A DNA stretch of 64,000 bases from Saccostrea echinata (taxonomy: Eukaryota), in NCBI RefSeq assembly GCF_033153115.1, contig NW_026889779.1, forward strand, positions 9,052,001-9,116,000, given 5' to 3'. Position 1 is the first letter of the stretch. Each line of letters starts with the position of its first letter. Made by a program: the position numbers and the translations under genes. The notes below the pieces were generated by a model. The model did no database searches. It had not been told where the DNA came from and saw only the letters and a program-made list of their open reading frames with translations. Shown here one piece after another: positions 38,955 to 59,735 of the stretch.

Positions 38955-41900
38955 TCACTTTCGTCCAATAACCGCTGAAAAGAAAAGAAAATGAGAATTA
39001 ATTCATTATTCATTTGAAAGACAAACTAATAAGAATAGTTTTTTTCTACCCAAAACAAATGAATAAATTGGTAAAGAGAAGCAAATGCGACTCACTCAAG
39101 GGCTCTCCACTGCAGTCCTCGTCTATCCTTCCATCTGCATCATCGTCTGAAACAAAATTAAAATATACTGTTTTAGTGTCCTGTGCTTTTTGCATTGAGG
39201 AAATCTACCCTGTTACTTAATAATGGTACATAATTGATTTTAACGAACCTTTTCCATTGCAGTCCTCCTCATCTACCTCACCGTCACAATCGTTATCGAC
39301 TTCATCACCCGGAGACATCGCCTTCGCATGACAACCCTAGAATAACAAAATATATACTACTTCCAAATAAACAATGACGTACATAATAGTACTTCATTAA
39401 TTCTTATTGCCATATCTAAAAAAAAATCCTCTTACAATGTTCCTATGTGTTTAATAAACTTGAATGACAATTGATCAAGGTTAATTTATTTTTCTTTGAT
39501 TGTATATAGTATATGATTAAATGATTATTCCATAATTCACTCACAGAATTAACAGGTTTTGTTAGCAGACCAATAGGGAATCCATAAGACTCGAGGTTAG
39601 CTTTACCGAACACGATACCGCCAATTACTGTGTTCGGATTGCTGTGCGTGACGGTATGGGTACCAACTGATATGTTGACGTATCCCGCTGCTAGATTGGT
39701 GCCTGGGATGTGGACATACGTTTGATTTTGTGGCAGTGGTTTTCCGTCTAGAATCAGACCAGCGGTTTGACTGGAATCAACCACAAACATAAAAAAGTTT
39801 TGATACTCGCCTTTGGAGTATTGGGGTGTCGCAAAAGTGTAATCTGCAGCATACTGTTCAATGGGAGGAATTGTAATTAGGCACGGATCTGCTGCATCTG
39901 AAGGCAGATTGGAATGTTTTGCCTGTGTTGCCGAGAGCTGATACACAGCAATTGGATGATTAGATGTCACATGAGCGTACAACTTAGAGCTGTAATTCCT
40001 TTGCACATGTTGTCCAGCATGACTGAGAAAAAAATGGTCCGTAAAATTTTTACCATCAATGACTCCAGTTACTTTAACACTGGTGTGTCCTTGGCTGGCA
40101 ACGAATCTGAAAATGTCACCTACATCTCTTTCAGGAATTGGCACTGTAGCAAAGTTTTTACCCCAGGCCTGGACAGGTAGTAACATTTCTGTCAGATGGT
40201 CACGTGAATTACCAGTGCTGCCAGCAATAGCCACAACAGCCTTCTTGTTACCACTTATGACACCCACAGCTTTGTTTGATATGATGTGAGTTCCTGTGAG
40301 GTCCCCAACGGAAGAGATTTCAAGGGTGCTGAAGCGGTTAAGGGTAACGTTTATCCACTGGTTTCTGTGGTAGACATGACCGTGGAAATTCACGCTAATG
40401 TTTGGATGATTAGCTAGCTTGATATGAACACGAGTGTGGTCATGGACACCGATCACTGCAAACACACAATAATAATAGGACGGGGAGTAGGAAATGGTGT
40501 AGTATTCTTTCCCCAGGACATCTGTAGGCAGTGCCAAGTAGGCATCGTCCGAGTAGACCTCTCTATTTACTCCATATACTACGATTTCTTCATCAGCCGA
40601 GATCAAAATTCCTTTGGTGCTTAGCTCGGTGTGATTCAATCGGAAGTCCTGATCGACGGCAACTCGGTGCACAACTCCGCGAGTTACAACAAACTGTTGA
40701 TTTATATGTGGATTGCGAGATCGTGGTGACGTCACATTGACGTGTACAGGTTTATTGCTGGAAGTGGTAATGAAGATCTCGGGATTGATGTCTGTGTGCT
40801 GTAGAATCTTGTTATCCATAAACGTTATAATAAACTGTTTCCCTTTACTGTCCAGTGCTCCTAAAATGAGAAATCATACATGATTGTATACTTTAACAGT
40901 TATTTTCAAAATTGAGTAGGTATCAATTATGATTCTTGCAGTTGAAGAGCCCAGTTACATCCCATGACAAACATTCTGAACACTTTGCAAAGGCGACGAC
41001 ACATAATGGGAATTCTTATTCAGAAATATGAAGTCAGTATTTTTGATTCCTTTAAAATATTTTCAATGTTTTAGTAAATGCATCTTTAACGTTTGTTTTG
41101 GAATATAATACGAGAGAGAGATTGACTATGTGTGTGTTTCTTCTCAATCTGTCATTTGCTAGCATAACAATACCGCTTATGGTATGTTTTAGAAAGGATA
41201 CAATGTAAATACAAACATTTTATATTATTAAAATCATTTTAGAGTGCTACAACTCACACGATGTGTGCAATAAAAATCGTATGGTGTTGTAATCACTTGC
41301 TATTTCAAGTACCTTCTTATACACACCTAACTTTCACTAGTCATGCAACCCTTAATTTAAAAAAAAACTACAATTAAGATTCCTATAATTAACTATAATC
41401 TATTACAGGAAAGAAATGTAAAAGTAATCAAATGTTAAACAAAGAAGTTGATGTTAATGAAACAAGGCTCGAAATGCATTTAACAGTAATTAACTGAACA
41501 AATCACCTAAGTCAAAAAAGTACGTGAACTGTCTTTAACAAGATTTGATTTGTTTTTTTTTTGTTTTGTTTTTTTTTTTTTTCAATTTTCTAAATCTTGT
41601 AAATGAATTATTTTTAAATCTTTGGATTAAAATAGATTTTTTCCCTTCAAAAAGAAGAAGGACAAAGTTAATGGAATTTTGTTGAAGCTTCCATTTCTTT
41701 AGATTCATCACTCATACAAATAAACGATATAGCAGGGTAAAAACACTACGAATTATCGGAATGGTTGAAAGCATGATTTGTATGGCAGGATTTTTTTTGA
41801 AGCGTTTGAGGATACCTAGACTAGAACTTTTTGGTAGTTCATTTTCTCTTAGAATGGACTTTGTCTGGCAGGGGTTTTGTGAAGCACCGCCAAATCCTAT

Positions 41901-42004
41901 ATTTATTGATTCTTTTGATAATTGATGAACGTTGTACAGTTTTAGCATCGAATATAACACTGTTTTGTTTTGTTTGTTTCTTTGTTTTGTTTAACGTCCA
42001 TCTG

Positions 42005-57012: not shown

Positions 57013-59735
57013 TCACTTCCTACCAATAATTGCTGAAAAAGAGGTAAAGATATTTTTAATCAGCAATAAATATCAAAAATTTGTGTAGAGTTAGCGTATT
57101 AAATAATTAGTTTGGGAATACCTTATATACTTACAGATTTCTGTACCGCTACAGTCTTCATCGATCCTTCCATCTCCATCGTCATCTGTAAAATCAAAAA
57201 TCACAAGAAAATAAAATGTAGGCCTCTCTAAACAAAAAGTCTTCAGAATCGCTTTGACGACAACATAACAAAATTATTAAGAACATAATAGGTCGAGATG
57301 TGTTTAGTATAGAAAAAGTTGATGCTGAAAAAAAAAACCATGAAAACCTAATGACACTGAGAAATGTTGTAAAGCCGTTCTATTCATAAAAAGGAGCATT
57401 CTGAGAAATGCTTATATTGGTTTTGCAAACCCTTTTGAACTCATCCTGTAACACAGTTAAGTATTAACACATATGTCGTCAGTCGTTACCTTGTCCATCG
57501 CAATTCTCCTCGTCCAATCTCCCATCGCAATCATTGTCTATTTCATCGCCTTTCCTCATTGGTGGTGCGTCACATACTGGGGTTTCACTTGTGGCCGGAG
57601 CAGTGGGTGAAGTCGTGCCGTGAGGTGGCTGATAAAGTTAGAATGAAATTCAAATGTGCACAAATTAAAAAACTACATGTATTTGGTAATTTAAATATTT
57701 CAATTACATGTATTATGACTATCCTCCGTTTACATGTTTTATTTTTCAAATATGATATAGGGAATCTTGGTAACCTGAGAGAATTCTTAAGCTTTACGGA
57801 TTTGTTTAATAATGAAGCAATGGACTCGATTTACTCAAATACTGGCATGTCAGTCAATTTTTTTTATCACTTTGGTGAAGTTATAGCTTCTACTTTTCAA
57901 TAAAGTTTGACGCTTGTTCGTTGTTACCAGAAGATGTCAATATAATTTAACGTATATCTATTAAGAATGAATTTATATTTTTTTTATAGTAACAGACATA
58001 CCGGTACATGTATAAAGAATTTCAGAAGGAACACATCCGATATTTTTAATTCGTATACATATAGCACAAGCACAACTGTATAGTTAAGGATAACAGCAAC
58101 TTTGAATATTGAAATAGAAATGAAAGAAGGTAATCACAATTGATAGTCAATTCGGTTTTTCGTTTTTGCATGTCAGATTTTTGGGGTTAGTCCCCCCTCC
58201 CCCCCCCCCCCCACTTTTGAAACCGTTGCTACGGACCTGTTTGTAAGCAAGTACAGAACACTTTATGCTAACAGCAAAGTGACAAGTGATAAGAGAAAAC
58301 TTACATTTACAGGATTGATCGGTTTGACAAGGAATCCAATGGGAAATCCGTACGATTCCACACGAGCTCTGCCGAATAGGATACCTCCGATTGTGACGTT
58401 GGGGCTTGTATGCGTGACGGTGTGGGTTCCAACTGTTATATTAACGTACCCTCCTACAAGGTGCGCGCCAGGTATGTGCACATACTTCTGATGGTGTGGC
58501 AGTGGTTTTCCATCTAGAAGAAGACCGCCCTTTTGATGACTATCGATTATAAACATAAACTGATTTAGGTATTGGCCGTGTGAGTACTCAGGGGTTGTGA
58601 ATGTGTAGTCTGTACCGTACTGCTCAATGGGAGGTATTGTGATCATGGACGGGTCGATATTTTCATGATGGTACGCCTGGGTTCTGGAAAATTGAAATAA
58701 CGCAATAGGTTCACTGGCCACCACATGGGAGTACAGGAAAGAACTGTAAACTTTTTGAACATAGTCTCCGGCGTGGGGAATGGTGAAGTTGTCAAAGAAG
58801 AGTGTTCCGTTGATTTTACCTCTCACAGCTACCTGTGTGTTGTCTTTGCTTGCCACAAATCGGAACTCATCACCTACCGACCTCGCTGGGATGGGTATTG
58901 TTGCGAAATGTTTGCCCCATGAATGTACCGGCATCAACATTTCTGTCAGATGATCACGTGAGCCACCCGTATTACCAACTATTGTTTTCTTGTTTCCACT
59001 GATGACTCCGACAGGAAGACTTGAAATCACATGACTTCCGGTTAGATCACCAACGGAGCTTACTTGGAAGGTCTGGTATTTGTTCATAGTAACGTTTATC
59101 CAATCATTTTTGTGATAGACATGATTGTTGTACGTCACTTCTACTCCGTCTCGGTTCGGAAGCTGAATGGACACTTGTGTGTTGTCATTTCCAGCAATAA
59201 CAGCAAAAACACAGTAGTAGTAGGCTGGCGCATAGGATATGGTGTAGTACTCAGTGCCTAGTACGTCTGTTGGCAAGGCTAAATAGGCGTCATCTGACGC
59301 TGTCTCTCTGTTGACGCCGTAGACAACTATCTCATCATCAGCTGTTATTTTGATGGCTTTGTTGACCAGTTCGGTGTGGTTCAAACGAAAATGAGGATCC
59401 ACCTCCTCTTTATGGACGATGCCGCGTGTCACAACGAAAGACTGGTGGACTCTAGGGTTTGTGGAGCCTGGGGAATTGACGTGAACGTGCACTGGTTTAT
59501 GACTGGCAGTGGTAATGAATAGTTCTGGATTGATGTCAATTTTTGGACTGTGGAAGTTGTCCAAAAACGCAACAATGAATTTTGTTCCCCTGTTATCCAG
59601 TGCAGCTTAAATATGTAAAGGATAATTCAAGTCAAGGCAGGGTTTAATCAGTTTACAAAATATAAAAAAAGAACATATTCAAAACTCACAGTACACCAAA
59701 GGAAGGAAAAATAGTCCACACAAAAAGGACTTCAT
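57013..59735 (-). CDS. Secreted IgGFc-binding domain protein with Pro/Thr linker and acidic DxDxDG tail, copy C (~518 aa, 5 exons)
   Basis: Exons: 59735-59690 (MKSFLCGLFFLPLVYS), 59605-58305, 57628-57490 (PPHGTTSPTAPATSETPVCDAPPMRKGDEIDNDCDGRLDEENCDGQ), 57185-57135 (DDDGDGRIDEDCSGTEI), 57032-57013 (SIIGRK*). Phases 1,0,1,1 as in A and B. Confidence 0.88.

What the first reader, a model, noticed from the sequence alone, without database searches (positions are those of the whole stretch)
38955..59735. Tandem family of compact secreted proteins: FCGBP-N domain, twin Cys-bracketed DxDxDG motifs and an IGRK tag
Seen: the ORF track shows only the large exons. Manual splicing recovers three complete five-exon genes with conserved phases (1,0,1,1) and conserved 51- and 20-nt final exons. 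The architecture is signal peptide, stand-alone IgGFc_binding domain, then C..GDExDNDCDGxxDEExCxGxDDDxDGRIDEDC, then [TS][VI]IGRK. Established: vertebrate FCGBP carries this domain ahead of many VWD-C8-TIL repeats, none of which are present here. Dx[DN]xDG is a Ca2+-binding loop, and DNDCDGxxDE resembles the Pfam putative metal-binding (MopE-related) repeat common in myxobacterial surface proteins. Inference: a lineage-expanded, metal- or calcium-dependent mucus, immune or shell-matrix protein family whose function is not described by the 'IgGFc-binding-like' label.
Basis: partly seen in the sequence, partly recalled or inferred. Interest (0 to 1): 0.8.

Follow-up and report, generated by a model that had tools for sequence, protein, structure and literature searches.

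The report
Oyster secreted proteins with calcium-loop tails
Three neighbouring oyster genes encode secreted proteins made of the misnamed "IgG-Fc-binding" N-terminal domain, a very acidic double calcium-loop-like tail, and a short end that looks like a hormone-style trimming and amidation signal; the genes are real and already annotated, and their function is untested.

Summary
The window is Saccostrea echinata. It carries three minus-strand, five-exon genes with GT..AG introns in phases 1,0,1,1, encoding 508, 504 and 518 aa. Each has a signal peptide, one PF17517 domain in one large exon, an exon with ..GDExDNDCDGxxDEE.., a 51-nt exon with DDDxDGRIDEDC, and 20 coding nt giving [TS][VI]IGRK.

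RefSeq already has all three genes (XP_061187975-77). Spliced public contigs confirm introns 1-3 of the middle gene. Purifying selection is strong (dN/dS 0.09).

The interpretation needs three corrections:
- The twin loop is not special to these compact proteins. It follows PF17517 in long TSP1/LDLa paralogues of this genome and in brachiopod, chiton, gastropod, annelid and amphioxus proteins.
- It matches the MopE motif only below threshold. Its loops look like EF-hand-type calcium loops rather than copper sites.
- The "IGRK tag" is really hydrophobic-Gly-(K/R)0-3 across oysters and mussels. That is the classical carboxypeptidase/PAM amidation signal. This is my inference and is untested.

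Calcium binding, amidation and biological role all remain unproven. RefSeq's model of gene A ends in a different last exon.

The parts
42835..42886 (-). Gene A exon 1: start codon and signal peptide (52 nt, ends in phase 1)
   Evidence: tblastn with P0001/P0003; GT donor
39545..40860 (-). Gene A exon 2: whole PF17517 (FCGBP-N type) all-beta domain, 1316 nt
   Evidence: Pfam E 1.6e-57; AG/GT borders
39249..39336 (-). Gene A exon 3: Cys, then GDEVDNDCDGEVDEEDC (first loop), 88 nt, phase 0 to 1
39096..39146 (-). Gene A exon 4: DDDADGRIDEDC (second loop), 51 nt, phase 1 to 1
38955..38974 (-). Gene A coding part of the last exon: TVIGRK and stop. AATAAA lies 34 nt downstream. RefSeq's model of gene A does not use this exon
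51618..51669 (-). Gene B exon 1: start codon and signal peptide (52 nt)
   Evidence: spliced contig joins 51617/8 to 49317/8
48015..49318 (-). Gene B exon 2: PF17517 domain, 1304 nt
   Evidence: Pfam E 6e-59; 100% identical to RefSeq P0001; contigs
47429..47516 (-). Gene B exon 3: first loop, 88 nt
   Evidence: joints 47515->48014 and 47313->47429 in public runs
47263..47313 (-). Gene B exon 4: second loop, 51 nt
47126..47145 (-). Gene B coding part of the last exon: TVIGRK and stop
   Evidence: same end in RefSeq P0001; junction not covered by the contigs laid
59690..59735 (-). Gene C exon 1: start codon and signal peptide (46 nt)
58305..59605 (-). Gene C exon 2: PF17517 domain, 1301 nt
   Evidence: Pfam E 1.9e-59; RefSeq P0014
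57490..57628 (-). Gene C exon 3: Pro/Thr-rich linker and first loop, 139 nt
57135..57185 (-). Gene C exon 4: second loop, 51 nt
57013..57032 (-). Gene C coding part of the last exon: SIIGRK and stop
   Evidence: same end in RefSeq P0014
36080..36167 (-). Leftover exon-3 copy of a decayed fourth gene. About 90% identical to gene A exon 3, with AG and GT kept. RefSeq's gene A model uses it out of frame as its last exon
34330..34380 (-). Degenerate exon-4-like remnant that has lost the DxDxDG pattern
   Evidence: tblastn
37176..37229 (+). Inverted 18-aa fragment of a PF17517 exon (remnant)
   Evidence: tblastn, E 2e-4

Best explanation
These are three old tandem paralogues, plus one decayed copy, of a bivalve subfamily of secreted N-glycosylated proteins of about 50 kDa.

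Each protein is the minimal form of an ancient animal unit. That unit is the roughly 425-residue all-beta FCGBP-N1-type domain (PF17517) followed directly by a short, very acidic module of two Dx[DN]xDG loops stapled by cysteines. In most relatives the same unit is the head of longer TSP1/LDLa proteins. Here the protein stops right after it.

Inferred mechanism:
- The all-beta domain is the binding part. Its ligand is unknown and is not IgG.
- The twin loops chelate Ca2+ through Asp/Glu oxygens and fold only when loaded. The protein's shape or binding would then depend on calcium.
- The dedicated last mini-exon encodes hydrophobic-Gly-(K/R)n. That is a signal for carboxypeptidase trimming and PAM amidation, and would leave a hydrophobic dipeptide amide. 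I put this last step at about 40%.

Shown: gene models, expression and splicing of gene B, domain content, conservation, purifying selection.
Inferred: secretion, Ca2+ binding, amidation, biological role.
For: Gene models:
- Exon coordinates, GT..AG borders and phases.
- RefSeq proteins with the same ends for genes B and C.
- Spliced contigs for introns 1-3 of gene B, at 99% or more identity.

Domain:
- PF17517 scores 195-202 bits.
- The AlphaFold2 model has pLDDT 85 and pTM 0.83, with residues 20-445 all beta.

Selection:
- dN/dS between A and B is 0.09 at dS 0.97.

The twin loop is part of the unit:
- 23 of 26 DNDCDG-coding sites in the genome follow a PF17517 exon; the control pattern gave 0.
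- The 48/51-nt phase 1-1 second-loop exon is shared with long paralogues.
- In 50 proteins from six phyla the invariant columns include D463, D466, N467, D468, C469, D470, D474, E475 and E476.

Ca-loop likeness:
- The nearest solved sequences to the tail profile are almost all EF-hand loops (oncomodulin, lanmodulin, troponin C, calmodulin). These matches are weak.
- 18 of 32 residues are Asp or Glu (direct reading).

Amidation-type end:
- Oysters end in IGRK, IGRKK, IGRKR, IIG, VIG or LVG.
- Mussels end in AIGR, V[IV]GRRR, IFGRR, or VGRRRKR plus 3 residues, which is a furin-like site.
- Gly502 is invariant in 14 full-length members.
- A large secreted glycoprotein ending Pro-Gly-Lys is trimmed and amidated by PAM in CHO cells (PMC4146454).
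Against: - No experiment shows metal binding, amidation or any ligand.
- AlphaFold2 gives the tail only pLDDT 46-67.
- Every match of the tail to known Ca-binding proteins is non-significant (E 0.03 or worse), and no EF-hand or TSP3 Pfam model hits.
- The exon 4 to exon 5 junction was not seen in the contigs laid.
- RefSeq's gene A model ends differently. One S. cucullata model, P0079, ends ..TELSK.
- Known PAM substrates are nearly all small peptides.
- The copper monooxygenase domain found in the genome does not tell PAM apart from dopamine-beta-hydroxylase-like enzymes.
Confidence: 0.6

Rival explanations
1. The C-terminal Gly-basic end is not an amidation signal. The basic residues stay on, or are merely clipped. 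They might act as a small positive patch, for instance folding back on the acidic loops or binding anionic partners.
For: No amide has been shown. PAM substrates are usually small peptides. Basic ends are common in secreted proteins. The protein shows no sign of prohormone-type internal cleavage sites.
Against: The number of basic residues varies from 0 to 3 among close relatives, and some end in plain Gly (IIG, VIG, LVG). The Gly and the hydrophobic residue before it do not vary. One mussel group has RRRKR followed by three more residues. That fits a cleavage site, not a functional basic end.
Confidence: 0.35
2. The tail is a copper- or zinc-binding MopE-type module, as the Pfam name 'Cu-binding_MopE' suggests.
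For: PF11617 is the only Pfam model that touches the tail. A Myxococcota MopE-related protein aligns at 65% identity over 34 residues.
Against: The scores are below the gathering cut-off (24.1, 23.9 and 18.4 bits against 27) and cover only model positions 17-30. The conserved ligand-like residues are all Asp, Glu or Asn, which are hard oxygen donors. There is no conserved His, Met or Trp: the His in GCHAK is Q, R or D in orthologues. In MopE itself copper is held by two His and a kynurenine, and calcium stabilises the protein (PMC3423442).
Confidence: 0.08
3. The Asp-rich tail works on calcium carbonate rather than on free Ca2+. The proteins would then be shell-matrix or biomineral-surface proteins.
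For: The tail carries a net charge of about -16 over 32 residues. Asp-rich proteins are typical of bivalve shell matrices (general knowledge). 'IgGFc-binding' hits are listed in mollusc shell proteomes (PMC6003135, PMC4023409; listed, not read).
Against: The same module is conserved in amphioxus and in an annelid, which make no shell. Where I read the passages, 'IgGFc-binding' meant VWD-type zonadhesin-like proteins, not this domain. No tissue data were available here.
Confidence: 0.12
4. They act like vertebrate FCGBP, as mucus proteins that bind immunoglobulin-like or Fc-like partners.
For: They share the PF17517 domain and the database name.
Against: They have no VWD/C8/TIL repeats. [quoted passage not shown] Mouse FCGBP lacks this domain, and its role in the human protein is unknown (PMC11796319). 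Oysters have no IgG (general knowledge).
Confidence: 0.05

Closest known systems
N-terminal (N1) domain of human FCGBP, Pfam PF17517 IgGFc_binding
   Same: The same domain family over nearly the full model length (positions 1-294 of 297, about 200 bits). It is extracellular and follows a signal peptide.
   Different: Nothing like the 13 VWD-C8-TIL assemblies follows it. The function of the human domain is itself unknown, and it did not bind IgG (PMC8267560, PMC11796319).
Long bivalve PF17517 proteins with TSP1 repeats and an LDLa domain (often named 'hemicentin-1' or 'uncharacterized'), e.g. P0042, P0048, P0133, P0138
   Same: The same domain is followed by the same Cys..GDxxDNDCDGxxDEE..DDDGDGxxDEDC module. 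The same small phase 1-1 exon encodes the second loop.
   Different: The window's genes stop right after the module with a Gly-basic mini-exon. The long forms go on into TSP1 repeats, LDLa and a hydrophobic end.
MopE-related 'putative metal-binding motif' (PF11617) of Myxococcota surface proteins
   Same: The core xDNDCDGxxDE is shared, and it can be repeated in tandem.
   Different: The match is below Pfam's cut-off and covers only half of the model. Seven PF17517 proteins of Chondromyces apiculatus and one of a Myxococcales MAG end right after the domain and carry no such motif. No bacterial protein combining the two was found in this small sample.
EF-hand and other DxDxDG calcium loops (parvalbumin/oncomodulin, calmodulin, lanmodulin; thrombospondin type 3 repeats)
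   Same: Asp at loop positions 1, 3 and 5, Gly at 6, Val or Ile at 8, Asp at 9. Loop 1 also has an acidic residue at position 12; loop 2 has Cys there. The best weak PDB matches are EF-hand loops.
   Different: There are no flanking helices and no EF-hand or TSP_3 Pfam hit at E up to 10. The loops start 16 residues apart and are held by cysteines.
Amidated peptide precursors, and the Pro-Gly-Lys end of antibody heavy chains
   Same: A C-terminal X-Gly followed only by Lys/Arg on a protein of the secretory pathway (PMC4146454).
   Different: The substrate would be a folded glycoprotein of about 500 residues. No processing has been observed.

Membership tests
Pfam PF17517 (IgGFc_binding / FCGBP N-terminal domain) | HMM score above the gathering cut-off of 25.6 bits over most of the model | tested here: met
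   195.5, 200.2 and 201.8 bits over model positions 1-290/294 of 297, for the three large exons
Vertebrate FCGBP (mucus protein) | Repeated VWD-C8-TIL assemblies after the N-terminal domain | tested here: not met
   Pfam scan of RefSeq proteins P0001 and P0014 at E up to 10 shows no VWD, C8 or TIL
Vertebrate FCGBP (mucus protein) | Binding of IgG Fc | not testable with these tools
   Purified mouse FCGBP and a human N-terminal construct did not bind IgG (PMC8267560)
Pfam PF11617 (Cu-binding_MopE, putative metal-binding motif) | HMM score at or above the gathering cut-off of 27 bits | tested here: not met
   Exon 3 alone scores 23.9, 24.1 and 18.4 bits over model positions 17/18-30 of 30. Whole proteins score 10-18 bits
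MopE-type copper site | His/His/kynurenine (oxidised Trp) copper ligands | tested here: not met
   The tail alignment has no conserved His or Trp. Ligands as described in PMC3423442
EF-hand | Helix-loop-helix with a 12-residue loop; hit to an EF-hand Pfam model or a significant match to solved EF-hand proteins | tested here: not met
   No EF-hand Pfam hit. Best PDB profile match is oncomodulin at E 0.031, loops only
DxDxDG calcium-binding loop (motif level) | Asp at positions 1, 3 and 5, Gly at 6, a hydrophobic residue at 8, acidic residues at 9 and 12 | tested here: met
   Loop 1 (DNDCDGEVDEED) meets all positions. Loop 2 (DDDADGRIDEDC) meets them except position 12, which is Cys with Asp at 11. 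Read directly. D466, N467, D468, D470, D474, E475 and E476 are invariant, and G471 nearly so, in 50 proteins
Thrombospondin type 3 repeat (PF02412) | Pfam hit | tested here: not met
   No hit at E up to 10
PAM (peptidylglycine alpha-amidating monooxygenase) substrates | C-terminal X-Gly, bare or followed only by basic residues, on a protein that enters the secretory pathway | tested here: met
   IGRK in genes A-C. The same pattern is seen in more than 20 oyster and mussel proteins. The N-terminal hydrophobic leader is read from the sequence
PAM (peptidylglycine alpha-amidating monooxygenase) substrates | C-terminal amide on the mature protein | not testable with these tools
   Needs mass spectrometry of native protein

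The most novel reading that the evidence does not exclude
The hydrophobic-Gly-(K/R)n mini-exon is a true amidation signal. If so, oysters and mussels share a family of extracellular glycoproteins of about 50 kDa whose C-terminus is routinely trimmed and alpha-amidated. The result would be a hydrophobic dipeptide amide next to a calcium-loaded acidic knot, acting as the partner-binding end. That would be a rare case of conserved, purposeful amidation of a large folded protein. The twin loop itself would be an unnamed calcium module that belongs to the FCGBP-N domain across bilaterians.
Probability: 0.3. Interest if true: 0.65.

Novelty: new variant of a known kind. Interest (0 to 1): 0.42.

Why it matters
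- More than a hundred oyster genes carry the label "IgGFc-binding protein-like", a name that says nothing true about them.
- The domain is always followed, from amphioxus to molluscs, by a twin calcium-loop-like module. That defines a larger conserved unit and gives a concrete, testable handle (calcium dependence) on a domain whose role is unknown even in human FCGBP.
- The compact oyster and mussel proteins are the simplest natural form of that unit, which makes them good material for structure and binding work.
- If the Gly-basic end is really amidated, the known reach of PAM would extend to large extracellular proteins.

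Tried and rejected
- Bacterial origin of the domain-plus-motif unit. Seven PF17517 proteins of Chondromyces apiculatus and one of a Myxococcales MAG end right after the domain, at the point that matches the oyster exon 2/3 border, and have no DNDCDG. The idea is not supported in this small sample.
- Gene conversion of the 3' end between A and B. 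Exon 3 is 97% identical against 81% for exon 2, but introns 3 and 4 are only 75% and 64% identical. This looks like constraint on the small exon, not conversion. It remains unexplained.
- Whole-domain fold match. Foldseek gave only TM about 0.1. VIA-align matched only residues 244-348, to the TM1070/ASRT beta-sandwich at Z 10.4.
- Sequence profile of the whole family against PDB: no hit.
- Word search with the tail alone: only close oyster orthologues and one Myxococcota protein.
- ESM Atlas with the tail: nothing usable.
- Second AlphaFold2 run with 50 tail-bearing relatives: tail pLDDT rose only to 46-67.
- Search for Gly-basic terminal exons in other short paralogues of this genome: one candidate only (SLIG, contig 56), none in the contig 4 cluster.
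Downstream exons of exon-only database hits could therefore not be read.
- The large representative search was not run. I make no claim that rests on absence of relatives.
Exons were searched one by one. The full-length proteins used were the database's own records, returned by the search tools.

Full report
WHAT IS THERE. The window comes from the oyster Saccostrea echinata: the large exon at 48015-49307 is 100% identical to a RefSeq protein of that species. The window is contig 30, 9,052,001-9,116,000, of a 923-Mb assembly. The ORF list shows three minus-strand ORFs of 433-458 aa. Each matches Pfam PF17517 (IgGFc_binding) over nearly the whole model, at E 1.6e-57 to 1.9e-59. A six-frame motif scan found DNDCDG, a second D.D.DG and IGRK-stop downstream of each ORF, on the same strand, plus a fourth DNDCDG at 36111-36128.

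GENE MODELS. I read the DNA and computed the exon borders.
- Gene A: 42886-42835, 40860-39545, 39336-39249, 39146-39096, 38974-38955.
- Gene B: 51669-51618, 49318-48015, 47516-47429, 47313-47263, 47145-47126.
- Gene C: 59735-59690, 59605-58305, 57628-57490, 57185-57135, 57032-57013.

All 12 introns are GT..AG with phases 1,0,1,1. The coding lengths give 508, 504 and 518 aa. A poly(A) signal follows each stop within about 70 nt, so the "20-nt exon" is only the coding start of the true last exon. Exons were searched singly. For full-length work I used the public records that the search returned.

INDEPENDENT SUPPORT.
- RefSeq holds three consecutive proteins for this locus: XP_061187975 (gene A), XP_061187976 (gene B) and XP_061187977 (gene C).
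- Those of B (504 aa, ending ..TPLTVIGRK) and C (518 aa, ending ..EISIIGRK) agree with the exon-by-exon reading.
- Contigs of four public runs from two studies, laid on 47000-51800, skip exactly 49318/9-51617, 47516/7-48014 and 47314-47428. The ends read CT..AC on the plus strand, which is GT..AG on the gene's strand. Identity is 99% or more. Gene B is therefore transcribed and spliced as predicted at introns 1-3.
- The last junction was not covered by those contigs.
- RefSeq's gene A (P0077, 512 aa) ends ..EPLRLSCEDDVSG. That string is the leftover exon-3 copy at 36167 read out of frame. RefSeq therefore joins exon 4 of gene A to a remnant 2.9 kb further on and skips the TVIGRK exon. I could not lay reads a second time to decide between the two ends.
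- The S. cucullata orthologue of gene A ends TVIGRK (P0003).

SELECTION AND HISTORY. A and B differ at dS 0.97 and dN 0.086 in exon 2 (dN/dS 0.09). C is saturated at silent sites against both. These are old duplicates kept under strong constraint. Homology between A and B covers 38929-39388/47102-47561 and 39534-40866/48004-49325, at about 80%. A decayed fourth copy survives in three pieces: an exon-3 copy at 36080-36167 (about 90% identical to A, borders kept), a degenerate exon-4-like piece at 34330-34380, and an inverted exon-2 fragment at 37176-37229.

THE DOMAIN. AlphaFold2 on P0001 with 44 and then 50 relatives gives pLDDT 85 and pTM 0.82-0.83. Residues 20-445 form one all-beta body. The folded unit is thus larger than the 297-position Pfam model. 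No solved structure matches by sequence. Foldseek finds only generic beta-sandwich arrays at TM about 0.1. VIA-align matches residues 244-348 to the TM1070/ASRT sandwich (Z 10.4, rmsd 3.1, 98 residues). The name is misleading. A human construct holding this domain did not bind IgG (PMC8267560). The mouse protein lacks the domain, and its role is called unclear (PMC11796319). Where I read papers that mention "IgGFc-binding protein" in molluscs, they mean VWD-type, zonadhesin-like proteins. I found no paper on the compact form.

THE TWIN LOOP. Ten tails align as C-x7/8-GD-x-x-DNDCDG-x-x-DEE-x-C-D-G-x-D-x-D-x-DG-x-x-DEDC, with 21 invariant columns.
- Each loop has Asp at positions 1, 3 and 5, Gly at 6, Val or Ile at 8, and Asp at 9. 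Loop 1 also has Asp at position 12, as in EF-hand-type loops; loop 2 has Cys there and Asp at 11.
- 18 of 32 residues are acidic.
- The only Pfam model that touches the tail is PF11617 (MopE-related). It scores below its cut-off and covers only its last 14 positions. A Myxococcota MopE-related protein aligns at 65% over 34 residues.
- A profile of the tails finds, among solved proteins, almost only EF-hand loops (oncomodulin, lanmodulin, troponin C, calmodulin), all non-significant at E 0.03 or worse.
- No conserved His, Met or Trp is present. Oxygen-only ligands point to Ca2+ rather than copper.
- AlphaFold2 does not fold the tail with confidence, at pLDDT 46-67. That is uninformative for a module expected to need ions and disulfides.

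THE MODULE IS NOT SPECIAL TO THESE GENES. The genome has at least 114 PF17517 matches and 26 DNDCDG-coding sites, against 0 for the control pattern.
- 23 of the 26 sites lie on the same strand, mostly within 4 kb downstream of a PF17517 exon and three at 5-9 kb. One is the remnant. Two are elsewhere.
- In the clusters on contigs 25, 8, 9 and 47 the motif exon is followed by TSP1 repeats and an LDLa domain.
- The 48/51-nt phase 1-1 second-loop exon is shared by long and short forms.
- A profile search with 14 short forms found the same domain-plus-module in scallops, pearl oyster, ark shell, a unionid, a chiton, periwinkle, a sea slug, Lingula, the annelid Owenia and three Branchiostoma species. 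In Lingula the module is repeated in tandem.
- In a 50-protein alignment the first loop is as invariant as the best columns of the domain itself.
- Myxobacterial PF17517 proteins stop right after the domain and lack the motif. In this small sample the module looks like an animal addition, and the oyster exon 2 equals the ancestral domain.

THE END. Only the Gly and the hydrophobic residue before it are constant.
- Oysters: IGRK, IGRKK, IGRKR, IIG, VIG, LVG.
- Mussels: AIGR, VIGRRR, IVGRRR, IFGRR. One paralogue group has VGRRRKR plus three residues, which is a furin-type site.
- Gly502 is invariant in 14 members.
- Two mussel members sit on Logan contigs barely longer than their full coding sequence (P0111, 511 aa on 1632 nt; P0023, 500 aa on 1719 nt). 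That fits spliced mRNA.
- X-Gly followed by basic residues is the textbook substrate, after carboxypeptidase trimming, for peptidylglycine alpha-amidating monooxygenase (general knowledge).
- A large glycoprotein ending Pro-Gly-Lys is amidated this way in CHO cells (PMC4146454).
- Bivalves make amidated peptides (general knowledge). The genome has copper type II monooxygenase domains, though that does not single out PAM.

I rate amidation at about 40%. The main rival is an unprocessed or merely clipped basic end.

VERDICT. The genes are already annotated, but the family is not described in any paper I could find. It is wrong in treating the module as the hallmark of a lineage-specific compact family. 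What is particular to this oyster and mussel subfamily is that the protein ends right after the module with a conserved processing-type mini-exon. Function remains open. Earlier notes of this scan marked the same 20-nt exon (s1-817926) and other Gly-basic signals elsewhere in this genome (s1-817767). The second note was not tested here.

Noticed in passing
window 36080-36167 (-) and RefSeq protein P0077: RefSeq's gene A model joins exon 4 (39096) to the leftover exon-3 copy at 36167, out of frame, and ends RLSCEDDVSG. It skips the conserved TVIGRK exon. This is either read-through transcription into the remnant or a prediction artefact.
   Followed up: partly
window 39249-39336 versus 47429-47516: Exon 3 of genes A and B is 97% identical in DNA (dS 0.14). 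Exon 2 is 81% identical (dS 0.97) and the flanking introns 64-75%. The small exon seems constrained at silent sites too. The cause is unknown.
   Followed up: partly
window 5179-6423 (-) and 17922-19148 (-): Two long ORFs of 414 and 408 aa look like innexins (gap-junction proteins), each mostly in one exon. The call is from reading the sequences only; no family scan was run.
   Followed up: no
window 25871-26329 (-): A 152-aa ORF whose sequence looks like part of a reverse transcriptase, so probably a retroelement remnant. The call is from reading the sequence only.
   Followed up: no
window 44369-44719, 51952-52299, 34475-34778, 41968-42162, 45962-46160: A dispersed repeat of about 350 bp, 77-92% identical between copies, lies between the genes. 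It produces the recurring plus-strand ORFs that begin MRDLYRANACRD.. or MRVLYRTYACRD...
   Followed up: partly
window 38273-38671 and 54015-55198: Two tandem repeat arrays: copies about 56 bp apart at about 96% identity, and copies about 430 bp apart at 82% identity.
   Followed up: no
L020 = G000:C56:18751400-18759900: A further short-form paralogue on another contig, closest to the mussel type (..GCRAKQMQYGDEIDNDCDGEIDEE.., DNDGDGRIDEDC). A candidate last exon 835 nt downstream would end SLIG, with a poly(A) signal 74 nt on.
   Followed up: partly
G000 contig 4, 1.25-1.45 Mb (L001-L007): A cluster of seven PF17517 genes with DNDCDG. Where found, the second-loop exon is 48 nt (four of the seven loci, plus L019 on contig 54). 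No Gly-basic end and no TSP1 lie within 6 kb. This looks like a third architecture, not resolved here.
   Followed up: partly
P0189, P0190, P0192, P0193 (JGI/Logan contigs of 2.3-3.0 kb): Proteins of about 615 aa from unnamed samples carry PF17517 and then two twin-loop modules, and share a conserved end ..LAAQ[IL][QK]xCC[QD]. The contigs are barely longer than the coding sequence. The organism is unknown.
   Followed up: no
   Followed up: no
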